DNA of 63,084 nt, counting the filler, from Octopus bimaculoides (taxonomy: Eukaryota): the NCBI RefSeq assembly GCF_001194135.2. It is 4 parts of 4 records of this genome, joined end to end, with 100 filler letters (N's around TTAATTAATTAA, not from the genome) between each part and the next. Parts side by side here need not be neighbours in the genome. Positions count along the whole stretch, not along the records: positions 54,236 to 63,084 come from NC_069007.1; 3 more parts are not named here. The stretch is one strand, 5' to 3'. A model generated the notes under the pieces. The model did not search any database, was not told where the DNA came from, and saw only the letters and a program-made list of their open reading frames with translations. Below, one piece after another: positions 9,433 to 63,084 of the stretch. Positions within the stretch are counted from its first letter, which is position 1, and every line of letters begins with the position of its first letter. Both the position numbers and the translations under genes were made by a program.

Positions 9433-11236
9433 TAGAGGAGACCAGTACCGACGCAAGCTCAAGTTTGAAACCGAAAAAATAGATTCGGTTCTTGGGCTAT
9501 TTCAGACGAGAAGTATACCTGAAACTAGCAAGATTATTTGGGCGGCCGATATGGTTGCTGCAGATAGAGATGAATACAAAAGAAAAGAACAAACAGAAGG
9601 TAAAGAACCATACTGGCGTAGACGAATTTGTGAGAAACAAAGAACGTTAAAAAGACATTTAGGACAAGTTGATAGATTGAGAAGAAGGGAATTGCAGAAC
9701 GAAAGCATAAGAATTATGCTGGAAAGAACATATAGAATAAGAGATAAAGGTTATGATGTGATATTGGAAGAATTGAAACAAAGAGTAGTAGCAAACAAAG
9801 CCAAACTGGAAAGAAATGAGAATAGAAAAAGACAGTTCAGGCAAAGCAGATTGTTTGAAGTTAATCAGAAGAAACTGTTTCAGGAACTAGATGCGCAAAT
9901 ACACGTAACAATGATACCAGATACAGAAGAAAACAAGGCATTCTGGAGAGGGATCTGAGAAGAACTTGTAGAGCATAATGATTAAGCGGAGTGGCAGCAT
10001 GAAATCCAAGTTAGGTTAAAAAATATAGAAGTCCAAGAAGACATAAAGATAACTACAAAAATGATAAAAAAAAGTAGATAAGAAAATTCCCAAATTGGAA
10101 GAGCCCAGGACCAGATGGGGTCCAAGTGTACAGGATGAAGAAGCTGAGAGGGATCCACGAAAGGATAGCACAACAGCTAGATGAGTGCTGGCAGAAAGGC
10201 GTAATACGGAGCTGGATGACAAAGGGAAAGACATTGTTATGTGCTAAGGAGCCTGAAAAGGGAAATGTTGCATCCAACTTTAGACAACATGCATTCTGCT
10301 AATATAGAAATTAATGTTTGGTTCTTTGCCCGGTGAATTGTGCAGATAGTTGAAAAAAATTGGACTGCTACCCATTGAAGAGAAAAGGGTGTTGAAAAAG
10401 GAGCCGGGGAACGAAGGGTCAGCTCTTAATTGATGATCTAATTATCAGGAACTGCAAGAGAAGGCATGCAAACCTCAGCATGGTATGGATTGACTATCGC
10501 AAAGCATACGATATGCTACCACACTACCTGATAATAAGAACAATGGGAATGTATGGAGTAGCAGAGAATACGAGAAGTCTTATATTGAATAATATGAAAT
10601 GCTGGAGAACGGAATTGATAGCAGCGAAGTAAATACTAGAAGAGGTGAAAATCAAGAGAAGTTATGTGAAATGTACGACCTGGACAGAGCACGGAAATGG
10701 TACGAACATGAACCAGAAGGAGTCATCGAGAACAAGGATACCGGTGGGATTTAACAATCCAATCTGACTCCCTAATCTATGCTCGGAGACCAGATATTGT
10801 TGTGGTAGATAAAGGATAAAAAGAAATTAAGATTATAGATATTGCAATACCCGAGGATGCCTGAATATATGACAACGAACTTCAAATGATTGCGAAGTAC
10901 AAGACAACTAAAAGAGGAAATTGAAAGAATGTAAACTATGAAGAGAGTGTCTGTCATTCCAGTAATTGTAGGAGCACTCGGAGCACTAACAATCAAGTTC
11001 TAGAAATATATTAGAGACATAAGAATTGATTCGAAAGCATAGCAAGCCCCCAAACCTACTCTACTGGAGAGAGCTAGGATTTGGGGATTGGTACTTGGAT
11101 GCAGAATGTCTCCCACGATAATTAACAACCATGTACCAAAGCTTAAATGTGCGGAAAGAGACTATGTGAGGCACCTGACAGCAGGTTGCTGTCCGCTCTC
11201 ACATAATCTACCAGAGCAAACAAGACCGGGCGCCCC
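9433..11236 (+). mobile_element. R4/Dong-like non-LTR retrotransposon, 5'-truncated, RT core deleted
   Basis: [75 protein letters not shown]. Near 10660 it jumps from EVKIKR to LCEMYDLDRARKWYEHEPEGVIENK, then RRPDIVVVDK..KIIDIAIPED (RLE) and VIPVIVGALG. A (GAT)n(AAT)n tail follows. Confidence 0.9.
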
Positions 11237-54235: not shown

Positions 54236-54543
54236 CAGTTTAAAAAACCTTTGACAATGTAAATATGTTAATAGTTACCATGGGTAGCAAAAAACACACA
54301 AAAACCAGGATATCACAGCCGTCTTATAGGTAGAGATACTAAGTTGACGTGAACTCTTATTTATATGTGTTTTGCTCCATTTATTATTATTATTATTATT
54401 CATATCTACTCAAAATGCATCGCTTTAACTTGGTATCTCTACCTATAAAACGGGTGTGATATCCTGGTTTTTTTTTTGTGTGTTTTTTGCTACCCATGGT
54501 AACTATTAACATATTTACATTGTCAAAGGTTTTTTTAAAACTG
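54236..54543. mobile_element. Foldback/MITE with ~110-bp nearly identical inverted arms
   Basis: 54236-54345 pairs with 54427-54543 around an ~80-bp spacer; starts CAGT. The left flank is lost in a gap. Confidence 0.85.
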
Positions 54544-54813
54544 AGATAATATTAATATATACATAAACTTATATATATCTATATATCTATATATATACAC
54601 ACATATATATGTATATTTGTGTATATATATATATATGTTGGTGTTGTGAAAGGTATCTTGTCTTAGAAAATCTGCCTCAACGAATTCTACCTGGATTGTG
54701 CAAGCATGGAAAGGTACGAAGATAAATAAAAGAATAAAGAAAATTAGAGTTACGTCCCCTTTGGCTGTAGGAGCAATATATGAGGGTGCACACGCAGTCA
54801 CATGTTATATAAA

Positions 54814-54844
<31 letters not shown>

Positions 54845-54861
54845 TTATATTATCTGTATCG

Positions 54862-55243
54862 GTCATTTGACTGCGGCCATGCTGGAGCACCGCCTTTTTT
54901 GTCGAACAAACCGACCCCAGGACTTATTCTTTGGAAGCCTAGTACTTTATTCTATCGTTCTGTTTTGCAGAACTGCTAAGTTACGGGGACGTAAACACAC
55001 CGACATCGGTTGTCAGTGCGATGAGGGTGAGAATAAACACAAACACAAACTTATGCATGCAAATATATATATATACATATACGACGGGCTTCTTTCAGTT
55101 TCCATCTCCTGAGTCCACTCACAAGGCTTTGGTCGCCCCGAGGCTATAACAGAAACACTTGCCCAAGGTCCCATACAGTGGGACTGAACCTGGAACCATG
55201 TGGTTGGCAAGCAAGCTACTTACCACACAGCCACTCCTGCACC
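54862..55243 (-). mobile_element. SINE family A, near full length
   Basis: Reverse complement is colinear with 49615-50045. Confidence 0.9.
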
Positions 55244-55246
55244 TAT

Positions 55247-55300
<54 letters not shown>

Positions 55301-55456
55301 GATGGGCTTTTTTCTGTTTCCGTCTACCAAATCCACTAACAAGGCTTTTGTCGGCCCAAGGCTATAGTATCTTGCTCAAGGGCATAACGCTTTACCAGGA
55401 ATTGAACTCATGACCTTACGATTGTGAGTTGACTACCTTACATGCATAACATACAT

Positions 55457-55690
55457 TGTCATCATTTAACATCCATTTTCCCACACTTGGATCAGACAAT
55501 TCGTTGAAGCAGATTTTCTACAGCTGGATACATTTCCTGATGCCAACTCTCACCTGTCTCTAAACAAATGAATATGTCTCCATGGCAGAACATGTTCTTC
55601 CCCGAAAGACTCGAAATGAACAACACTGCGTGTGTGACAGGGATGCTCGTTTACAGCCACTATATGAGGTGAAGACAAGGCTACACACAG
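55457..55690 (-). mobile_element. SINE-like fragment with the CATCCAGCTGTAGAAA...GTTAAATGATGA tail
   Basis: Tail homologous to 56250-56392 in the opposite orientation. Confidence 0.6.
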
Positions 55691-55809
55691 GTGTGTGTAT
55701 ATATATAGTAAGGATGGCTTGTTTGCAGTTTTTCGACTGAAGGGGAAAATATTTATGTCACTAAAGTGACCAACGGTGCTATTCAGCAAAATTATTGTTA
55801 GAAACAAGA

Positions 55810-56392
55810 GACCTGGCTCGCGTACCAGTGGCCCGTAAAAATCACTATCCGAACGTGATCGATGCCAGGGTCGTCTGATTAGTGCTGGTGGCACATAAAA
55901 AGTACTATCCAAACGTGATCGATGCCAGGGCTGCCTGACTGGCTCCCGTGGCAGTCGCATGTAAAAAAGCACTATCCAAGCGTGGCCGATGCCAGTACCC
56001 CCTGACTGGTTCTCATGCTGGTGACACATAAAAAGCACTATTTGAACGTGATCAATGCCAGGGCCGCCTGATTAGCTCCTGTGCCGGTGGTATGTAAAAA
56101 AAAAATCACTCCGAACGTGATCGATGCCAGGGTCGTCTGATTAGTGCTGGTGGCACATAAAAAGTACGATCCAAACGTGATCGATGCCAGGGCCACCTAA
56201 CTGGCTCCTGTATCGGTGGCACGTAAAAGGCACTCGCTACACTCTCGGAGTGATTGGCGTTAAGAGGGCATCCAGCTGTAGAAACATTGCCAGATCAAAT
56301 TAGAGCCTGGTGCAGCGCTGGCTTTCCAGACCTCAATCAAACCGTCCAACCCATGCCAGCGTGGAAAACGGACGTTAAATGATGATGATGAT
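55810..56392 (+). mobile_element. Retroposon with an internal 58-71-bp tandem array and a (GAT)n-ending tail
   Basis: Six units of CACTATCCrAACGTGATCGATGCCAGGG... starting at 55843, 55903, 55970, 56036, 56107 and 56165, then GGCATCCAGCTGTAGAAA..GGAAAACGGACGTTAAATGATGATGATGAT. Confidence 0.8.
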
Positions 56393-56520
56393 TAAGAGTG
56401 AAAACAATTTACAGCCACAATAAGCTCCATCTTCTTGACTGACAAGGGGAGGAAAGCTCCCTACTATAAGATGCTGCTTATTGTGGATATGAGTTGTTTT
56501 GACTGTTATTTCTAGTAATT

Positions 56521-56811
56521 TATTTATGTGCCCTTTCAAGCTTAGCCAGGCTCATGGGCCCGGTTTCTATGGCGTATGCGTCCCCTCCTTCCAGCTGGAC
56601 GGGACGCCAGTCCATCACAGCGTTGCTCAAGAAACAGGAAGAAAGAGTGAGAGAAAGTTGGAGCGAAAGAGTACAACAGGGGTCGCTACCAACCCCTGCC
56701 GGAGCCTCGTGGAGCTTTTAGGTGTTTTCGCTCAATAAACACACACAACGCCCGGTCTGGGAATCGAAACCGCGATCGTGCGGTCGCGAGTCCGCTGCCC
56801 TAACCACTGGG
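56521..56811 (-). mobile_element. SINE with family E head and body joined to the family C (V-like) tail
   Basis: 56631-56811 matches 57040-57205; 56521-56625 matches the reverse complement of 52200-52304. Confidence 0.85.
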
Positions 56812-56846
56812 TTAAATTCAAAGTCATCTAAGATAATGCTTCTAAT

Positions 56847-57222
56847 TTTTTTGTTGGCACTCCGTCGCTTACGACGTCAAAGGTTCCAGTTGATCCGATC
56901 AACGGAACAGCCTGCTCGTGAAATTAACGTGCAAGTGGCTGAGCACTCCACAAACACGTGTACCCTTAACGTAGTTCTCGGGGAGATTCAGCGCGACATA
57001 GTGTGACAAGACTGACCGTTTGAATTCCAGGCACAACGGAAACAGGAAGTGAGAGTGAGTGAAAGTTGTGGTGAAAGTACAGCAGGGTTCGCTGCCGGAG
57101 CCTCGTGGAGCTTTTAAGTGCTTTCGCTCAATAAACACTCACAACGCCCGTTCTGGGAATCGAAACCGCGATCCTATGACAGCGAGTCTGCTGCCCTAAC
57201 CACTGGGCCATTGCGCCACCAC
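56847..57222 (-). mobile_element. Full-length SINE family E with a 12-bp target-site duplication
   Basis: AATGCTTCTAAT at 56835-56846 and 57223-57234; A box TGGCCCAGTGG, B box GTTTCGATTCC; second copy at 61077. Confidence 0.92.
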
Positions 57223-57254
57223 AATGCTTCTAATAGACGAACCTATATTCACAT

Positions 57255-57740
57255 ACAGAAAATATCGGTCAAATTAATATAACTGAAAATACGTTAACAA
57301 GGTTATAAAGGCAATCCAAGAGAGGCTAAATTCAAAGTGAAGTGAGTAAATATCTCTAATAGACGAATGCATGCAAAAAGAACGTTCAGAAGAAATATAA
57401 TATTCTAAGAAAAACTAGCTTAGTATTTAAGTTTTAATGACGTCAGTAGATAACGAAAGAATGAAAAAAAAACAACATAGGTATTCTAGAATAGGATAAT
57501 TAGAAACATTGAAGTTCTATGTCACGACAATTAGTTATCTATCAATTAAATATGTATCATTCTGTAATCTAGATTTCCAAATTGTAGCAGATAATACTTA
57601 CGATCCCCTGTTATTATCTTACGTTGATAAACTATATTCTTTCTTAGACACTGATTTTCTAAAGGACAGATAAATTCGTTTTTGAAATTACAAAAGCATT
57701 TATCCACTTGTATGTGCTACTCATGGTTGAAAGAATTATT
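57255..57740 (+). repeat. Unclassified interspersed repeat, copy 1
   Basis: Aligns with indels to the reverse complement of 60340-60810 (e.g. TAATCTAGATTTCCAAATTGTAGCAG). Confidence 0.8.
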
Positions 57741-57796
57741 GCTAATCCTCCTCAAGGCAGGATTGTTATTAATATTATAATCAATATTAACTTACA

Positions 57797-58185
57797 TCCC
57801 CAGAACAACCCAGAATTAAATTAAAGGACCATAAACCTAATTTTGACACCGATCCATAAGTTAGACTAATTTGCCCGAATATTGGTAAAATATATAAATT
57901 TATTATCGATAAGTATATTCCTAAGCTTCGACAAAATATTAGTTAATGTTTTTGGTCTAATTCATTGGAAATAGTTGACTGATTCATTAATATCAAGGAT
58001 AAATAATTATCGGGTTGGTCACGGTGCCTTTTCTAAGTACGTTTTCTACTTTCCTAACTAGGTGCCCTCTACTCTAGACTTTTCTCTCGCTATTTTTTTT
58101 TTTACTAAGCTTTAAAGCCTCTACTCTAATCGCCCTTTTCAGCGCTATTCACCATAAGTTGTTGACAACAGATGATGGATAGCAA
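57797..58185 (+). mobile_element. Penelope-like RT N-terminal fragment plus a probable pseudo-LTR remnant
   Basis: 57797-58003 reads SPEQPRIKLKDHKPNFDTDP*VRLICPNIGKIYKFIIDKYIPKLRQNIS*CFWSNSLEIVD*FINIKDK, matching the Penelope KDHKxNF..PxxRLIxP..IGKI.K.ILD...W.N...V..WF motif. Confidence 0.75.
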
Positions 58186-58249
58186 GTTAGTCGAGCAGTA
58201 GTTGACATCCGTCAACATCCGCTGAAATAACTTGCTAACCCGGTCTCTG

Positions 58250-58590
58250 AAAATCTGGCACGTTTAGAGAGAGAGCCACAACAAACAGTAGTGCCGGTAC
58301 AGTTCCCCGAGGAACTTCGTTGTGTATTGATGTCTCCACAGAGAGAGCACCATTGGCTGCAACTGTCCGACTTCTGTCATCTAAAAAGTCGTGCAGCCAC
58401 TCTCGCAGTTTTCCAGTGATACCAAGGTCGCGTAGTTTGTGACATATCATCCCATAATCAACTTTGTCGAAGGCTTTGGCAAAGTCCAGGTATATCGCAT
58501 CCACATTTGAGTAGTTGAACCTGTTTGAGTATTCAATCATAATGTAGTAGCTGTGTGAGGCAGCCCCTTCCTAGGCGGAAACCCACACAG
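58250..58590 (-). mobile_element. CR1-clade LINE reverse transcriptase fragment
   Basis: GFRLGRGCLTQLL and VDAIYLDFAKAFDKVDYGMICHKLRDLGITGKLREWLHDFL..EVPRGTV. Confidence 0.85.
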
Positions 58591-59239
58591 TCCTTCCGAG
58601 CGTCCAAAATACTATTCCTGTCCTCCACTAGTATTAAAGTGATAGACGTTCCCAAGAAGGTTTCTAGAAACCTGAAGAAATCTGGCTTTCCAGCACTGTT
58701 GGAGCATAATCCGTCCTCAGTCTAAAAGCGCCACCTTCACTGCCATTCACGTCCAGGGCCATCCCTCGACCACCCGGGTCCAGAAAGATAGCCTGTACTT
58801 GGAGATCTAAGGATTTCCGGGGTAGCATTGCTACACTGCCACCAGCTTCCGGTAGACCACAAGATGAGAATACCTCGTAGTCCTCGAAAATGGATGCTAG
58901 AGCGTGTTTTCCGTTGATCCTTGTTTCACTAATAGCAACCATATCTAAATCAAGCCACCTGAGATCATTAAGCAAGTGACCTTACTTCCAAGCTAATCCC
59001 AGGCCCCGCACATTCACACATCCCATTCTCAACACAGTCATGCTAGTCGGAGAAAGAAAAAAAGGAGAAGTTACTCACCTTGAATTTCGAGAAGCCCGGA
59101 AGTTCTGGGCCTCTCTACTAACGAAAAATTATTAAAAGCCCCTTCTAACTGCCTTTTATCAACTGATTTTTAAAATATCTCCGCACTACATGGGAATTTT
59201 TCTCTTATAGTTTTATAAACGTCTGACGACGTTTTAATT
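58591..59239 (-). mobile_element. L1/Tx1-like LINE remnant: probable end of ORF1 and start of ORF2 (APE endonuclease)
   Basis: ATG at 59041: MTVLRMGCVNVRGL..DMVAISETR..GGSVAML..FLDPGGR..LDV..FRLRTDYAPT..LILVEDRNSILD, the APE motif series. Confidence 0.75.
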
Positions 59240-60339
59240 NNNNNNNNNNNNNNNNNNNNNNNNNNNNNNNNNNNNNNNNNNNNNNNNNNNNNNNNNNNNN
59301 NNNNNNNNNNNNNNNNNNNNNNNNNNNNNNNNNNNNNNNNNNNNNNNNNNNNNNNNNNNNNNNNNNNNNNNNNNNNNNNNNNNNNNNNNNNNNNNNNNNN
59401 NNNNNNNNNNNNNNNNNNNNNNNNNNNNNNNNNNNNNNNNNNNNNNNNNNNNNNNNNNNNNNNNNNNNNNNNNNNNNNNNNNNNNNNNNNNNNNNNNNNN
59501 NNNNNNNNNNNNNNNNNNNNNNNNNNNNNNNNNNNNNNNNNNNNNNNNNNNNNNNNNNNNNNNNNNNNNNNNNNNNNNNNNNNNNNNNNNNNNNNNNNNN
59601 NNNNNNNNNNNNNNNNNNNNNNNNNNNNNNNNNNNNNNNNNNNNNNNNNNNNNNNNNNNNNNNNNNNNNNNNNNNNNNNNNNNNNNNNNNNNNNNNNNNN
59701 NNNNNNNNNNNNNNNNNNNNNNNNNNNNNNNNNNNNNNNNNNNNNNNNNNNNNNNNNNNNNNNNNNNNNNNNNNNNNNNNNNNNNNNNNNNNNNNNNNNN
59801 NNNNNNNNNNNNNNNNNNNNNNNNNNNNNNNNNNNNNNNNNNNNNNNNNNNNNNNNNNNNNNNNNNNNNNNNNNNNNNNNNNNNNNNNNNNNNNNNNNNN
59901 NNNNNNNNNNNNNNNNNNNNNNNNNNNNNNNNNNNNNNNNNNNNNNNNNNNNNNNNNNNNNNNNNNNNNNNNNNNNNNNNNNNNNNNNNNNNNNNNNNNN
60001 NNNNNNNNNNNNNNNNNNNNNNNNNNNNNNNNNNNNNNNNNNNNNNNNNNNNNNNNNNNNNNNNNNNNNNNNNNNNNNNNNNNNNNNNNNNNNNNNNNNN
60101 NNNNNNNNNNNNNNNNNNNNNNNNNNNNNNNNNNNNNNNNNNNNNNNNNNNNNNNNNNNACGCGCCCAAGACAATTTTGTTTTTTGTCTCTCAGGAACAT
60201 TTTCTACCTGGTGTGATTTAACTTCGTTGCAGCGGTATGGGACCCTGCATCTCAAAATATTCCGATGGAGGCTTTAGGGCTACCCTTCTCCCATTCCTTT
60301 TAACGATTTTCCTTGCTATTTTAAAATCCCCATCTATGC

Positions 60340-60810
60340 TAATTCTTTTAATCATGAGTACCACAAACGAGTATACAAATGCTTTTGTAATTCCAAAAAC
60401 GAATCTATCTGTCCTTTTGGAAATCAGTGCTTAAGGAAGAATATAGTGTATCAATGTAAGATAATAACAGGGGGGGGGGGTCACAAGTATTATTACATCG
60501 GTGTACCTGCTACAATTTGGAAATCTAGATTACATAATCGAGCACATTTAATAGATAAATTAATTGTCGTGACATAGAATTTCAATGTTTCTAATTGTCC
60601 TAACCTAGAATTCCTATGTTATTTCACTGTTTCGTTATCTACTGACGCCATTAAAAGTTAAATACTAAACTGTTTTTCCTAAGAATATATTTCTTCTCAA
60701 CGTTCTTTTTGTGTGCGTTCTTCTATTAGAAACATTATTTTGGATTGCCTTGATAACCTTGTGTTAACATGCATTTCCAGCTATATGAATTTGACTGATA
60801 TTTTCTGTAT
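60340..60810 (-). repeat. Unclassified interspersed repeat, copy 2
   Basis: Inverted homolog of 57255-57740. Confidence 0.8.
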
Positions 60811-60829
60811 CTAAATACGTTGAATGCAA

Positions 60830-61076
60830 TGTCGCTATCGGTTCAAATATGCTTGTGGCACGTTTGGACTAATAAACTAGCCAATCACTGTTTTGCCATG
60901 GAGAAAATTTCGGAGCATTTTGCAGCGTTTCAAAGTAGCTATCTCCTCTTCGGTGAGTAGTCCAAAGTAGTGATAGTCGGAAGGGGAGAGAACTGGACTG
61001 TATGCAGAGTGTTCCAGCAACTGGAAACCCATCTTTTCTATGGTTTCAACAGTATGAGCGACAGTATGCAGAATGT
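60830..61076 (-). mobile_element. mariner transposase C-terminal fragment, interrupted by a SINE
   Basis: HTVETIEKMGFQLLEHSAYSPVLSPSDYHYFG corresponds to the mariner HPPYSPDLAPSDYHLF motif. Confidence 0.85.
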
Positions 61077-61355
61077 GGAGGCGCAATGGCCCAGTGGTTA
61101 GGACAGCGGACTCGCGGTCATAGGATCGCGGTTTCGATTCCCAGACTGGGCGTTGTGAGCGTTTATTGAGCGAAAACACCTAAAAGCTCCACGAGTCTCC
61201 GGCAGGAGATGGTGGCGAACCCTGCTGTACTCTTTCACCACAACTTTCTCTCACTCTTACTTCCTGTTTCTGTTGTGCCTGTAATTCAAAGGGTCAGCCT
61301 TGTCACGCTGTGTCACGCTGAATATCCCCCGAGAACTACGTTAAGGGTACATGTG
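61077..61355 (+). mobile_element. SINE family E, cut off by a gap
   Basis: GGAGGCGCAATGGCCCAGTGGTTAGG..; colinear with the reverse complement of 56960-57222. Confidence 0.92.
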
Positions 61356-61971
61356 NNNNNNNNNNNNNNNNNNNNNNNNNNNNNNNNNNNNNNNNNNNNN
61401 NNNNNNNNNNNNNNNNNNNNNNNNNNNNNNNNNNNNNNNNNNNNNNNNNNNNNNNNNNNNNNNNNNNNNNNNNNNNNNNNNNNNNNNNNNNNNNNNNNNN
61501 NNNNNNNNNNNNNNNNNNNNNNNNNNNNNNNNNNNNNNNNNNNNNNNNNNNNNNNNNNNNNNNNNNNNNNNNNNNNNNNNNNNNNNNNNNNNNNNNNNNN
61601 NNNNNNNNNNNNNNNNNNNNNNNNNNNNNNNNNNNNNNNNNNNNNNNNNNNNNNNNNNNNNNNNNNNNNNNNNNNNNNNNNNNNNNNNNNNNNNNNNNNN
61701 NNNNNNNNNNNNNNNNNNNNNNNNNNNNNNNNNNNNNNNNNNNNNNNNNNNNNNNNNNNNNNNNNNNNNNNNNNNNNNNNNNNNNNNNNNNNNNNNNNNN
61801 NNNNNNNNNNNNNNNNNNNNNNNNNNNNNNNNNNNNNNNNNNNNNNNNNNNNNNNNNNNNNNNNNNNNNNNNNNNNNNNNNNNNNNNNNNNNNNNNNNNN
61901 NNNNNNNNNNNNNNNNNNNNNNNNNNNNNNNNNNNNNNNCCGGTATATATTGTCTGCGTGTGCGTGCGTGT

Positions 61972-62186
61972 ATTATTTCGTTATTGCCCACAAGGGGCTA
62001 CACACAGAGGGGACAAACAAAGACAGACAAACGGATTAAGTCGATTACATCGACCCCAGTGCGTAACTGGTACTTATTTAATCGACCCCGAAAGGATGAA
62101 AGGCAAAGTCGACCTCGGCGGAATTTGAACTCAGAACGTAGCGGCAGACGAAATACCGCTAAGCATTTCGCCCGGCGTGCTGACGC
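61972..62186 (-). mobile_element. SINE family B with an alternative 3' tail
   Basis: ATCGACCCCGAAAGGATGAAAGGCAAAGTCGACCTCGGCGGAATTTGAACTCAG; its tail differs from 44581-44630. Confidence 0.88.
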
Positions 62187-62441
62187 GTATGTGTGTATGT
62201 GTGCATGTGTGTGCTCATGGGTGGGTGTGTAAGATGTGATAGTGCATACATTTGCATAATGTATGTTAATAGAAAACTAATTCATGTTGTTGTCAGCCTA
62301 TATTTGGTTACGTTATATCTTTGAGAAAAGTCTTTATATAATGATATGAAACTCAGAAAAGATTGTCACACGATTTGTTTTTAGGTCGCGAGCTGTTGTC
62401 TGAGTTTTATCATTTAAAAAGAAACCAGAACGTTTCCAACA

Positions 62442-62669
62442 ATGTCCATCAGATATCTTCTGTTTGTGGGCATTTGTCTTGGCATTGCCAGAGATGTTTA
62501 CACGGAGGATTTGACCCTGAAATCTGGTGAGACCAGCAACGCTGCCGTCGAGGCAACCATAAGAAAAATCAGAACAAAATGTGTTCTGGCACAAGACTAT
62601 TATTTCCTGAGACGGTTAGCAGAGGCCCAGATGAACTCTACCTCAGCGACAACGGGTGGAATATGGAGG
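62442..62669 (+). CDS. First coding exon (76 aa, partial CDS) of a secreted protein with a probable lysozyme-like N-terminal domain
   Basis: Acceptor ATTTGTTTTTAG|62385; in-frame TAA at 62415-62417; ACAATG Kozak context; MSIRYLLFVGICLGIARDVYT signal-like peptide; then EDLTLKSGETSNAAVEATIRKIRTKCVLAQDYYFLRRLAEAQMNSTSATTGGIWR; phase-0 donor AGG|GTAAGT at 62670. Confidence 0.85.
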
Positions 62670-62781
62670 GTAAGTACAAGATATGCTAATATACACACAG
62701 GCGAACACAATCATGCAGTTTATGCATAAATACATCATGCATACATACATATATCATATATACGTACAAACGTGTTTGTGT

Positions 62782-63084
62782 ATTCTTTTATTCTTTTATT
62801 CTTTTACTTGTTTCAGTCATTTGACTGCGGCCATGCTGGAGCACCGCCTTTAGTCGAGAAAATCTACCCCAGGACTTATTCTTTGTAAGCCTAGTACTTA
62901 TTCTATCAGCCTCCTTTTGCCGAACCGCTAAGTTACGTGGACATAAACACACCAGCATCGGTTGTCAAGCGATGTTGGGGGGACAAACACAGATACACAA
63001 ACACACACACACATACATATATATATATACATATATACGACGGGCTTCTTTCAGTTTCCATCTACCAAATCCACTCACAAGGCT
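62782..63084 (-). mobile_element. SINE family A in the intron, running off the window end
   Basis: Reverse complement matches 49735-50068. Confidence 0.92.

What the first reader, a model, noticed from the sequence alone, without database searches (positions are those of the whole stretch)
62385..62675. Secreted lysozyme-like domain that appears to lack its catalytic Glu (possible pseudoenzyme)
The sequence shows a clean exon with signal peptide, good splice sites and an upstream in-frame stop. From recall, not a search, DLTL..G...AAVEATI.KI...C....DY.FLRRLA......GGIW.V is the start of a poorly characterised invertebrate lysozyme-like domain, often fused to vWA or other extracellular domains. 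That family typically reads RRxAYVES..G....GGIWQV. Here it reads RRLAEAQMNS...GGIWR: Q replaces the Glu of the ES motif, R replaces the GxxQ Gln, and the loop between them is shorter. Inference: a non-catalytic glycan- or peptidoglycan-binding derivative, possibly lineage-specific, in secretion, matrix or immunity.
Basis: partly seen in the sequence, partly recalled or inferred. Interest (0 to 1): 0.75.

Follow-up and report, generated by a model that had tools for sequence, protein, structure and literature searches.

The report
Octopus dead lysozyme-like domain exon
This is the first coding exon of a secreted octopus protein whose N-terminal domain belongs to an unnamed family, shared by marine invertebrates and bacteriophages, that looks like a very divergent lysozyme; the octopus copies have lost the family's conserved glutamate and so are probably non-enzymatic.

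Summary
ATG 62442 to the GTAAGT donor at 62670 encodes 76 residues with a signal peptide, preceded by an in-frame TAA. The same exon with the same boundary occurs in Octopus bimaculoides, O. sinensis and O. vulgaris (72-83% identity).

The recalled family is real. It is a ~150-residue all-alpha domain (FLRRxAxVE[ST]xDG...GGIWxV...PLYSALA...QAxxW) found in octopus, echinoderms, a mite record and unnamed eukaryotic contigs. It is often followed by a vWA domain. It has no Pfam, NCBIfam or PDB sequence match.

The window's Q63 lies in a column that is Glu in 102 of 106 non-octopus members. All seven octopus sequences carry Gln there and share further losses and a shorter loop.

"Lysozyme-like" rests on convergent but individually weak evidence:
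- Two confident AlphaFold models find only GH23/lytic-transglycosylase/endolysin folds as consistent Foldseek matches (TM 0.45-0.54, E > 0.1).
- hhalign places the family Glu on the MltE catalytic Glu (P = 0.0027).
- The family matches PHROG 3108 (E = 2.6e-19), an unknown-function phage family that sits in the endolysin slot of lysis cassettes.

Verdict: probably a catalytically dead lysozyme-like module in a secreted, probably vWA-containing protein. Activity and binding are untested.

The parts
62335..62341 (+). TATA-like element (TATATAA) about 100 nt upstream of the ATG; candidate core promoter
   Evidence: Conserved as TTATATAA in the aligned upstream region of O. sinensis LOC115227331. 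Function is inferred, not tested.
62385..62441 (+).
   Evidence: The AG at 62383-62384, which would make this an internal exon, is not conserved in O. sinensis.
62442..62669 (+). Coding part of exon 1: 76 codons, phase 0 at the 3' end
   Evidence: 83% identical to O. bimaculoides XP_014780714.1. Same exon boundary in O. sinensis. dN/dS 0.31.
62442..62492 (+). Predicted signal peptide (about residues 1-17, MSIRYLLFVGICLGIAR)
   Evidence: Hydrophobic core at residues 5-16. Conserved in all octopus paralogues. The cleavage site was not predicted with a dedicated tool.
62493..62669 (+). N-terminal ~40% of the ~150-residue all-alpha domain (helices 1-2, degenerate active-site motif, GGIW)
   Evidence: phmmer of this stretch gives E = 3e-22 to 7e-04 against canonical family members. 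Alignments A1 and A2. The AlphaFold model of the O. sinensis relative has pLDDT 90.4.
62604..62642 (+). Degenerate motif FLRRLAEAQMNST, corresponding to family FLRRxAxVE[TS]xDG
   Evidence: Column counts: E 102/106 becomes Q; T/S 106/108 becomes M; D 82/108 becomes S; G 102/106 becomes T.
62628..62630 (+). Codon CAG = Gln63, in the column of the family's conserved (putatively catalytic) Glu; one base away from GAG
   Evidence: hhalign puts this column on MltE catalytic Glu64.
62655..62669 (+). GGIWR, the counterpart of SLT motif II (GLMQ); GGIW is retained
   Evidence: G72, G73, I74 and W75 are near-invariant or invariant in the family. Aligned to GLMQ of the E. coli transglycosylases.
62670..62675 (+). 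Splice donor GTAAGT
   Evidence: An identical donor lies at the same codon in O. sinensis, whose annotated model splices to an exon starting VTNTQL.... The acceptor and downstream exons lie beyond the end of the piece.

Best explanation
The finding is the first coding exon of an octopod gene for a secreted protein. The exon encodes a signal peptide and the first ~59 residues of a ~150-residue all-alpha domain. The rest of the domain, and in the closest full-length relatives a vWA domain with an intact DxSxS metal site plus an uncharacterised C-terminal region, lie on exons beyond the end of the piece.

The domain belongs to an unnamed family present in metazoans (octopus, starfish, a brittle star, a mite record, and unnamed invertebrate-like contigs) and in tailed phages (PHROG 3108). 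I infer that the family is a very divergent member of the lysozyme-like superfamily, nearest to GH23 lytic transglycosylases and goose-type lysozymes. I further infer that the near-invariant Glu at the C-terminal end of helix 2, followed by a short hairpin carrying G-[GL]-[IL]-[WT]-x-V, is the catalytic acid.

In the Octopus clade that Glu is Gln. E->Q is the classical inactivating mutation used in the MltE and GH23 chitinase crystal structures. The adjacent T/S, D and G, a conserved Trp (W108->V) and three other near-invariant positions are also replaced, and the following loop is shortened. The structural core is kept (L56, R58, A60, GGIW, PLYS.L, Q..W) and the exon is under purifying selection.

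The octopus domain is therefore most likely not a glycosidase. It is a retained scaffold that either still binds a glycan (peptidoglycan or chitin fragments) or has been recruited as a protein-interaction module. It would present the vWA domain in an extracellular matrix, adhesion or immune-recognition role.

Shown: exon structure, family membership, the E->Q column, clade-wide fixation, and vWA fusion in relatives. Inferred: the lysozyme-like fold, the catalytic role of the Glu, loss of activity, and any binding function.
For: - Exon and orthology.
- Family: 14 hits in the exhaustive HMMER scan, and 152 proteins with a profile of 17 domain copies. A 108-protein alignment has A60, W75, P119, L120 and S122 invariant, and E63 at 90% or more.
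- Glu column: E 102, Q 5, V 1 of 108. All 7 octopus sequences have Q, plus the shared changes G32S, F49L, G67T/I, W108V and A123G.
- Fold, octopus relative: AlphaFold of the O. sinensis relative has pLDDT 90.4 and pTM 0.82, all-alpha, with Q63 near the C-terminal end of helix 53-65. Every Foldseek PDB match with TM of about 0.3 or more is a lysozyme-superfamily enzyme: MltE (prob 0.77, TM 0.45), GH23 chitinase, MltC, GH73, Tge2.
- Fold, phage relative: pLDDT 94.9, pTM 0.91. Top matches are GH23 chitinase (prob 0.85-0.89, TM 0.47-0.54), phi6 lysin P5 (prob 0.85), MltE, endolysins and GH19. BFVD returns unnamed family members and then 'putative endolysin', LT_GEWL and SLT proteins.
- Profile-profile: the single local alignment lays the family ...ET..G...G.GI.QV on SLT ...ES...A.GLMQI, with the Glu on MltE E64; P = 0.0027.
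- Phage link: PHROG 3108 matches 61/108 metazoan members, best E = 2.6e-19, over nearly the full length. tblastn finds 14 phages.
- Gene context: in PMBT28, K21lambda1 and PSA28 the order is homologue, 3-TMD holin (phrog_785, E = 1e-25), N-terminal-TMD i-spanin-like ORF; in PMBT28 and K21lambda1 an overlapped small ORF follows, which in K21lambda1 has a signal sequence and LLVNC Cys (o-spanin-like). K21lambda1 has no other annotated endolysin. In phiKO2 the homologue follows a 3-TMD protein downstream of the late promoter.
- vWA: PF00092 at E = 1e-86 and 4e-39 in the O. vulgaris relatives. A canonical-Glu domain exon is spliced to a vWA exon in an unnamed metazoan contig.
- Selection: dN/dS 0.31.
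Against: - No sequence profile of any lysozyme, SLT, GH19, GH23 or GH73 family matches any member. There is no PDB sequence match.
- All Foldseek E-values against the PDB are above 0.1, and TM-scores of about 0.5 are borderline.
- The hhalign probability is only 11%. It uses a thin 4-sequence SLT profile that was chosen after seeing the fold hits.
- A column-shuffle null for that score could not be completed because the script machine was lost.
- The Gln of GLMQ is already absent from most metazoan members that keep the Glu, so even the canonical metazoan proteins may not be ordinary transglycosylases.
- The endolysin role of PHROG 3108 is contextual only. One phage context, B8b, is uninformative.
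- The window contains only exon 1, so the rest of this particular gene, its vWA domain and its expression are unseen.
- dN/dS was computed over only 76 codons.
Confidence: 0.6

Rival explanations
1. The family is not a glycoside hydrolase. It is an all-alpha domain with some other role (a different enzyme chemistry, a lysis accessory in phages, or a binding module in animals). The conserved Glu would then be structural or ligand-binding, and E->Q in octopus would be a change of specificity rather than the death of an enzyme.
For: There are no lysozyme-family profile hits in 108 members and none in the PDB by sequence. Foldseek E-values are all above 0.1 and the hhalign probability is 11%. The GLMQ Gln is lost in most metazoan members. 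Every database name is 'hypothetical' or 'uncharacterized'.
Against: Two independently built, confident models both return only lysozyme-superfamily enzymes as consistent matches. The one hhalign alignment found is the catalytic motif in register. Phage homologues sit exactly where a soluble endolysin is expected, in genomes with no other recognisable endolysin. The single near-invariant acidic residue lies at a helix C-terminus before a hairpin, as in GH23.
Confidence: 0.25
2. The octopus domain is still an active enzyme that uses another acidic residue (for example E61, E30 or D52 in the window) or a substrate-assisted mechanism that tolerates Gln.
For: The core of the fold and GGIW are retained, and the exon is under purifying selection. 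The window has a Glu two residues upstream of Q63.
Against: E61 is Val in three octopus paralogues (P0002, P0005, P0048), so it is not conserved. The alignment between FLRR and Q63 is ungapped. Two residues upstream on a helix points to another face. Four to six other near-invariant positions around the presumed cleft are also replaced and the loop is shortened. E->Q at this position is described as inactive in MltE (title of PDB 6ghy).
Confidence: 0.07
3. This particular locus is a decaying or non-expressed paralogue: an orphan first exon amid transposons whose downstream exons are missing or broken.
For: Only exon 1 is visible. The piece is dense in SINE, LINE and other repeated fragments and has assembly gaps. 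The family is multi-copy in Octopus. Several gene models built on this exon are truncated or chimeric: O. bimaculoides 101 aa, and P0006 fused to an OSGIN2-like protein.
Against: The ORF, the start context, the donor and the TATA-like element are all intact. dN/dS is 0.31 against an annotated O. sinensis gene. Relatives with the same exon have complete domain+vWA models.
Confidence: 0.08

Closest known systems
Family-1 lytic transglycosylases / GH23 (E. coli MltE, MltC, MltD, Slt70; goose-type lysozyme; Ralstonia GH23 chitinase; phage phi6 lysin P5; Pfam SLT PF01464, CDD LT_GEWL)
   Same: Size (~150 residues) and mostly helical fold. A single conserved Glu lies at the end of a helix and is followed by Ser/Thr. 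About 10-17 residues later comes a hairpin motif, G-L-M-Q-[IV] in SLT and G-[GL]-[IL]-[WT]-x-V here; MltD itself reads GIWQI. A later YN..G-like motif is also present (QAxxWxxxYN..G). These are the best and only consistent fold matches, and the motifs align in register.
   Different: There is no significant sequence-profile match. TM is only 0.45-0.54. The Gln of GLMQ is not conserved in the metazoan branch. The N-terminal D.TL..G..G.DVV.A helix and the PLYSALA helix are family-specific. The window's protein has Gln instead of the Glu.
PHROG 3108 (Klebsiella phage phiKO2 Gp54, Salmonella phage PMBT28 AUZ95556, Pseudomonas phage PSA28 QVJ13210, Klebsiella phage K21lambda1 LOCUS2; annotated 'unknown function')
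   Same: True homologues of the metazoan family: E = 2.6e-19, full-length alignment, and shared E-[TS]..G, G.G..QVD, L..PL.S....RL, IP and A.YWKK.YN motifs.
   Different: The phage proteins are stand-alone, have no signal peptide, and carry a second conserved Glu (ETAAAET). They sit in lysis cassettes. The octopus proteins are secreted, fused to vWA, and lack the Glu. The direct match of the octopus proteins to the PHROG is not significant (E = 0.3), so the link is transitive through canonical metazoan members.
Catalytically dead relatives of lysozymes and chitinases (alpha-lactalbumin, sperm lysozyme-like protein SLLP1/SPACA3, chi-lectins such as YKL-40/Ym1, non-amidase PGRPs). From established knowledge; not tested here.
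   Same: The same evolutionary pattern: a secreted glycosidase scaffold kept under selection after replacement of the catalytic acid (Glu to Gln, Leu or Thr), then reused for binding or regulation.
   Different: These belong to GH22, GH18 or amidase folds, not to this family. Their ligand binding is demonstrated experimentally, whereas nothing is known for the octopus domain, and additional cleft residues (for example W108V) are also lost here.
Antibacterial genes shared between bacteria or phages and eukaryotes by horizontal transfer (GH25 muramidases; Tae/Dae amidases). From established knowledge; not tested here.
   Same: A patchy distribution: tailed phages of Gammaproteobacteria plus scattered metazoan lineages, with intron-containing copies on chromosome-scale metazoan contigs.
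   Different: No phylogeny was made here. Direction and number of transfers, or ancient vertical descent, are all open.

Membership tests
Unnamed metazoan/phage domain family (FLRRxAxVE[ST]xDG...GGIWxV...PLYSALA...QAxxW; PHROG 3108 relatives) | Significant sequence similarity of the window's mature exon to family members | tested here: met
   phmmer against 1.84 billion representatives: P0003 at 3.1e-22, P0007 at 4.5e-11, P0009 at 1.5e-08, plus octopus paralogues at 1e-18 to 1e-23.
Unnamed metazoan/phage domain family (FLRRxAxVE[ST]xDG...GGIWxV...PLYSALA...QAxxW; PHROG 3108 relatives) | Near-invariant core residues of the N-terminal half (L56, R58, A60, G72, G73, I74, W75) | tested here: met
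   All are present in the window.
Unnamed metazoan/phage domain family (FLRRxAxVE[ST]xDG...GGIWxV...PLYSALA...QAxxW; PHROG 3108 relatives) | Conserved Glu followed by Thr/Ser, then x-D-G | tested here: not met
   The window reads Q-M-N-S-T. The family is E 102/106, T/S 106/108, D 82/108 and G 102/106.
Unnamed metazoan/phage domain family (FLRRxAxVE[ST]xDG...GGIWxV...PLYSALA...QAxxW; PHROG 3108 relatives) | C-terminal half of the domain (I.W, PLYSAL, Q..W, F) | not testable with these tools
   The piece ends 415 nt after the donor. The C-terminal half is present on exon 2 of O. sinensis LOC115227331 and in the O. vulgaris relatives.
GH23 / SLT lytic transglycosylase / goose-type lysozyme | Match to the Pfam SLT (PF01464) or another lysozyme-family sequence profile | tested here: not met
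   0 of 108 members match, even at E <= 10, in Pfam and NCBIfam. There are no lysozyme-family chains among the PDB sequences.
GH23 / SLT lytic transglycosylase / goose-type lysozyme | Lysozyme-like fold | tested here: inconclusive
   Confident models (pLDDT 90 and 95). The best Foldseek matches are GH23, lytic transglycosylase, endolysin and GH19 enzymes with prob up to 0.89 and TM 0.45-0.54, but E >= 0.3.
GH23 / SLT lytic transglycosylase / goose-type lysozyme | E-S ... G-L-M-Q motifs in register | tested here: inconclusive
   hhalign of 115 family sequences against 4 E. coli SLT domains: 38-43 columns, P = 0.0027, probability 11%, with the family Glu on MltE E64. The shuffle control was not obtained.
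GH23 / SLT lytic transglycosylase / goose-type lysozyme | Catalytic Glu present | tested here: not met
   Gln63 (CAG, 62628-62630) in the window, and in all 7 octopus sequences.
GH23 / SLT lytic transglycosylase / goose-type lysozyme | Cleavage of peptidoglycan or chitin | not testable with these tools
   Needs a biochemical assay.
Phage endolysins (functional class; applies to the phage homologues only) | Soluble protein encoded next to the holin and spanins in a lysis cassette, in a genome with no other endolysin | tested here: met
   PMBT28, K21lambda1 and PSA28: homologue, holin (phrog_785, 1e-25), i-spanin-like ORF, with an overlapped o-spanin-like ORF seen in K21lambda1. K21lambda1 has no other annotated endolysin. 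This is context only; lytic activity is untested.
Secreted vWA-domain proteins | vWA domain (PF00092) downstream of the N-terminal domain | not testable with these tools
   It would lie outside the piece. It is present in O. vulgaris CAI9741682 and CAI9741735 (E = 1e-86 and 4e-39), the closest full-length relatives (78% and 72% identity in exon 1).
Pseudoenzyme (dead-enzyme derivative) | Catalytic residue replaced while the scaffold is kept under purifying selection | tested here: met
   E->Q is fixed in 7/7 octopus sequences from at least 3 named species plus the window. The core residues are retained. dN/dS is 0.31 over 76 codons. This is conditional on the Glu being catalytic.
Pseudoenzyme (dead-enzyme derivative) | Demonstrated absence of activity | not testable with these tools
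   Needs recombinant protein.

The most novel reading that the evidence does not exclude
The domain defines a previously unrecognised lysozyme-like (GH23-like) enzyme family. Under this reading it serves as the endolysin of a set of Gammaproteobacteria phages that currently have no known lysin. It was acquired, or anciently shared, by marine invertebrates, where it expanded into tandem arrays and domain+vWA proteins. Octopods then converted it into a catalytically dead glycan-recognition or matrix module, giving a new class of invertebrate pattern-recognition or adhesion protein.
Probability: 0.3. Interest if true: 0.75.

Novelty: new variant of a known kind. Interest (0 to 1): 0.55.

Why it matters
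If the reading is right, three things follow.

1. An unnamed domain family would receive a fold and a mechanism. It has no Pfam model, and every database name seen here is 'hypothetical' or 'uncharacterized'.

2. A group of Klebsiella, Salmonella, Pseudomonas and Shewanella phages and plasmid-prophages whose endolysin is unidentified would get a candidate lysin. That is directly testable and relevant to lysin discovery.

3. The animal branch offers a natural series: Glu-bearing stand-alone proteins, Glu-bearing domain+vWA proteins, and Gln-bearing octopus domain+vWA proteins, plus an independent E->Q lineage. This series could show how an antibacterial enzyme scaffold is converted into a non-catalytic extracellular module.

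For the window itself the gain is modest. It holds one well-supported exon of an uncharacterised, lineage-specific octopus gene family.

Tried and rejected
- Pfam on the exon alone returned nothing, and phmmer against PDB sequences returned nothing.
- The word-index protein search with the exon found only one protein. The exhaustive HMMER scan was needed to find the family.
- Two hits in that scan are spurious: P0008, a bacterial repeat protein, and P0011, a low-complexity repeat. Both were discarded after reading them.
- The look-up of the O. bimaculoides contig failed.
- The O. bimaculoides 101-aa model's second exon has no counterpart in the piece.
- Pfam and NCBIfam scans of all 108 members at E <= 10 gave no lysozyme family. 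The recurrent weak CobT hits (13 members, best 1.7e-4, below the cut-off) were treated as noise.
- Profiles A1 and A3 against PDB sequences gave only chance-level hits at E > 1.
- hhalign of the metazoan-only alignment against SLT gave P = 0.049. In global mode it was uninformative.
- A column-shuffle null distribution for the hhalign score was attempted twice, and the script machine was lost. No empirical P-value is available.
- Literature searches found nothing on this family. Terms tried: the motif GGIWQV; octopus + lysozyme-like + vWF; phrog_3108; and the LOC/XP identifiers.
- The spanin survey (PMC6139136) lists phiKO2 spanins only as singletons without coordinates in the main text. The PMBT28 genome note (PMC6025938) names a holin and no endolysin.
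- The Pseudoalteromonas phage B8b context shows no adjacent membrane protein, so it adds nothing.
- I considered and rejected E61 as the catalytic-column residue, because the alignment is ungapped and E61 is not conserved among paralogues.
- I considered and rejected R76 as a meaningful loss, because that column is variable across the family.
Full report
**1. What is in the sequence**

The piece (54236-63084) is AT-rich eukaryotic DNA. It is full of SINE-like and other repeats, has a weak reverse-transcriptase fragment, and has two assembly gaps.

At the finding's coordinates the plus strand reads as follows:
- an in-frame TAA at 62415-62417;
- ATG at 62442, with A at -3;
- 76 codons: MSIRYLLFVGICLGIARDVYTEDLTLKSGETSNAAVEATIRKIRTKCVLAQDYYFLRRLAEAQMNSTSATTGGIWR;
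- GTAAGT at 62670.

Residues 5-16 form a signal-peptide-like hydrophobic core.

The exon is real. It is 83% identical to O. bimaculoides XP_014780714.1 (E = 8e-34). It is 72-80% identical to proteins of O. sinensis, O. vulgaris and a further O. bimaculoides model.

On the O. sinensis contig the homologous exon ends at the same GGIWR|GTAAGT. A 5.3-kb intron leads to an exon that completes the domain. Window and O. sinensis align from about 150 nt upstream of the ATG to about 30 nt into the intron.

Over the 76 codons, dN/dS is 0.31 and dS is 0.33. A TATA-like TATATAA at 62335-62341 is conserved. I therefore read this as a first exon. The source is an octopod, either a species other than the three named or an unannotated paralogue.

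**2. The family**

An exhaustive HMMER scan with the mature 59 residues found the octopus paralogues. It also found distant proteins that carry one to three copies of a ~150-residue domain (domain boundaries).

A profile of 17 copies retrieved 152 proteins. The named ones are from O. sinensis, O. bimaculoides, the starfish Patiria and Acanthaster, and the brittle star Amphiura. One further hit is from a mite record. The rest come from unnamed ENA and Logan assemblies, on contigs up to megabases long. The two such contigs whose neighbourhoods I read also carry fn3, Calx-beta and reverse-transcriptase genes, and one has short spliceosomal introns.

The consensus is D.TL..GA.G.DVV.ATV..I..S.IF.DD..FLRRxAxVE[TS]xDG......GGIWxV ... 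I.W ... PLYSALA ... IP ...

None of 108 members matches any Pfam or NCBIfam lysozyme model, even at E <= 10. Profiles of the family hit nothing meaningful among PDB sequences. Every source name is 'uncharacterized' or 'hypothetical'.

**3. Architecture**

O. vulgaris CAI9741735 (533 aa) and CAI9741682 (837 aa) are signal peptide + domain + vWA (PF00092, E = 4e-39 and 1e-86) + an unassigned C-terminal region. The vWA domain has an intact DxSxS site.

The mite record has the same domain+vWA unit twice. On an unnamed metazoan contig, a Glu-bearing domain exon ends ...IEEEG|GTAAT. About 60 nt later, after TTTCAG, comes DCEIKGVDMVFVMDVSGS, the start of a vWA domain. The same pairing occurs twice on that contig.

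The domain+vWA architecture therefore predates the octopus E->Q change. The window shares 'IRTKC.LAQD.YFLRRLAEAQM' with CAI9741682 and with the O. bimaculoides 101-aa model. Its full product is thus probably of the domain+vWA type, but the piece ends before this can be seen.

**4. The Glu column**

Between the near-invariant L56, R58 and A60 and the motif there is no gap, so the column assignment is unambiguous. Window Q63 (CAG, 62628-62630, one base from GAG) lies where 102 of 106 non-octopus members have Glu.

The following positions are changed as well:
- T/S (106/108) becomes M;
- D (82/108) becomes S;
- G (102/106) becomes T.

The loop before GGIW is about 6-9 residues shorter.

All seven octopus sequences share Q63 together with G32S, F49L, G67T/I and, where exon 2 is known, W108V and A123G. 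They keep L56, R58, GGIW, PLYS.L, Q144, W148 and F161 (A60 in six of the seven).

E61 is Val in three paralogues, so it is not a conserved replacement. R76 is not informative: that column is A 43, Q 19, R 15 of 108, including R in Glu-bearing members. Three unrelated sequences (AAVQTNDG) show an independent E->Q change that retains T, D and G.

**5. Is it lysozyme-like?**

Four lines of evidence converge. None is decisive alone.

(a) Octopus-relative model. AlphaFold of the O. sinensis relative, with the 108-sequence alignment, gives pLDDT 90.4 and pTM 0.82. The model is all-alpha, with Q63 near the C-terminal end of helix 53-65. Foldseek against the PDB finds nothing at E < 0.1. However, every match with TM of about 0.3 or more is a lysozyme-superfamily enzyme: MltE (prob 0.77, TM 0.45), GH23 chitinase, MltC, a GH73 glucosaminidase and the T6SS muramidase Tge2.

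(b) Phage-homologue model. A second model, of a phage homologue, gives pLDDT 94.9 and pTM 0.91. The Glu lies at the end of helix 30-42, and a small bridge flanks GLTQ. The top matches are GH23 chitinase (prob 0.85-0.89, TM 0.47-0.54), phi6 lysin P5 (0.85), MltE, phage endolysins, GH19 chitinases and Slt70. Against BFVD it finds six unnamed viral relatives (E 8e-06 to 6e-04), followed by 'putative endolysin', LT_GEWL and SLT proteins.

(c) Profile-profile comparison. hhalign of the 115-sequence phage+metazoan alignment against four E. coli SLT domains (MltE, Slt70, MltC, MltD) gives one alignment of 38-43 columns. It lays LL.etAaaET..G......g.GI.QVD on l..ai..ES..nP.a.S...A.GlmQi. The family Glu falls on MltE Glu64 and G-I-x-Q-V on G-L-M-Q-I. 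P = 0.0027 and the probability is 11%. MltD itself reads VES...AAGIWQI.

(d) Phage link and gene context. The metazoan family is homologous to PHROG 3108, annotated 'unknown function'. It matches 61 of 108 members, best E = 2.6e-19, over positions about 30-154 of 160. tblastn finds 14 phages.

In Salmonella phage PMBT28 and Klebsiella phage K21lambda1 the gene order is:
- small terminase;
- the homologue (165 aa, no TM segment);
- a holin with 3 TMDs (annotated as holin in both records; the syntenic PSA28 protein matches phrog_785 at E = 1e-25);
- a 156-aa protein with an N-terminal TMD (i-spanin-like);
- an overlapped small ORF, in K21lambda1 with a signal sequence and Cys (o-spanin-like);
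- large terminase.

Pseudomonas phage PSA28 shows the same TerS-sized ORF, homologue, holin and i-spanin-like ORF.

K21lambda1 has no other annotated endolysin. The PMBT28 genome note names only the holin (PMC6025938). In phiKO2 the homologue Gp54 follows a 3-TMD protein just downstream of the late promoter. A soluble protein in that slot is, by established phage biology, the endolysin.

Against this stands the complete absence of sequence-profile hits, the non-significant Foldseek E-values, and a thin SLT profile chosen after the fact. My shuffle control was also lost. I put the lysozyme-like assignment at about 0.65-0.7.

**6. Mechanism proposed**

In GH23 enzymes a single Glu at a helix C-terminus protonates the glycosidic oxygen. 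E->Q at that site gives inactive proteins. MltE E64Q is titled an inactive mutant, and the GH23 chitinase E141Q and E162Q mutants were crystallised with saccharide bound (PDB titles of 6ghy, 3w6d and 3w6f).

If the family Glu plays that role, the octopus domain cannot hydrolyse or trans-glycosylate. Several other conserved residues near the motif, and Trp108, are also replaced. The cleft is therefore remodelled rather than merely switched off.

Retention of the hydrophobic and structural core, purifying selection, secretion and the fusion to vWA all argue for a functional non-catalytic module. Either it still recognises a glycan, or it acts as a protein-interaction surface in an extracellular adhesive, matrix or immune protein. 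That last step is inference only.

**7. Comparison and novelty**

The domain works like, and is probably distantly related to, GH23/SLT enzymes. It fails the sequence-profile membership test, so I do not file it as a member of PF01464.

It is a member of an unnamed family that includes PHROG 3108. I found no paper that describes either branch.

The dead-enzyme pattern is well known from alpha-lactalbumin, SLLP1, the chi-lectins and non-catalytic PGRPs (from my own knowledge). The phage-animal distribution recalls GH25 and Tae/Dae transfers (also from my own knowledge), but no phylogeny was made here.

I rate it a new variant of a known kind, with interest 0.55. It is a solid, lineage-specific pseudoenzyme candidate in an undescribed family. 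A by-product, a candidate new endolysin family, is arguably more testable than the octopus gene itself.

Noticed in passing
L009 2357-2854 (PMBT28); L012 611-1108 (K21lambda1); L008 3857-4354 (PSA28); L007 3890-4381 (phiKO2 Gp54): PHROG 3108, annotated 'unknown function', occupies the endolysin position of lysis cassettes (next to the holin and spanin-like genes) in phages that have no other recognisable endolysin. It is a candidate unrecognised endolysin family.
   Followed up: partly
P0006 (O. bimaculoides XP_014784849.1, 338 aa): This gene model joins the family's exon 1 (signal peptide to GGIWR) to an OSGIN2-like pyridine-nucleotide oxidoreductase (PF13738, PF07992). It is probably a chimeric prediction. 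The 101-aa O. bimaculoides model (P0001) also has a dubious second exon.
   Followed up: no
P0033, P0041, P0050 (ENA ERZ25074053; L013/L014 10001-10642): An independent Glu->Gln change (FLRRMAAVQTNDG) in a non-octopus lineage that keeps the neighbouring T, D and G. This is a second, less degenerate putative dead form.
   Followed up: no
L002 (ENA ERZ25067264 ctg836304, 1.46 Mb) and table: At least 14 distinct family members map to one 1.46-Mb contig of an unnamed eukaryote, as single-exon ORFs of ~190-200 aa. This is a large tandem or clustered expansion. The taxon was not identified.
   Followed up: no
L015 1837-4577 and 10001-11714: Twice on one contig, Glu-bearing domain exon(s) (one a triple repeat of 518 aa) are followed by a vWA exon and a further ~160-aa ORF. 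A ~60-nt GT...AG intron at 10570-10629 joins the domain to the vWA exon.
   Followed up: partly
P0133 (289 aa, Logan assembly): A family member carries a precomputed CARD domain (PF00619). That would place the domain in an intracellular death-fold signalling protein rather than a secreted one.
   Followed up: no
P0093, P0095, P0124; L016 10001-13844: The echinoderm members start MAGKIKVA.../MATDIRQ... with no signal peptide and are the closest to the phage proteins (E about 1e-15 to 1e-17 against the PHROG). The Patiria gene spans 3.8 kb (spliced) beside a START-domain gene on a 17.5-Mb contig, so it is not contamination.
   Followed up: partly
window 54830-55246, 55249-55369, 62789-63084: Copies of one SINE-like element (76-91% alike), also present several times in the O. 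sinensis contig L001. One copy lies in the intron about 120 nt after the donor.
   Followed up: no
window 56630-57738 versus 60340-61329: A series of collinear inverted repeats (82-92% complementary, about 1.1 kb per arm) flanks a weak reverse-transcriptase fragment (58235-58975, minus strand) and the N gap at 59240-60159. This is either a large palindromic element or a scaffolding artefact. The arms include a second short repeat also found at 61969-62185.
   Followed up: no
window 55837-56228: Three tandem copies of a ~130-nt unit (64-88% identity).
   Followed up: no
L012 31779-34429 (K21lambda1): The Klebsiella phage that carries the homologue also encodes proteins annotated as a PurZ-like adenylosuccinate synthetase and a dATP triphosphohydrolase, which suggests a 2-aminoadenine (Z) genome. 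This is unrelated to the finding.
   Followed up: no
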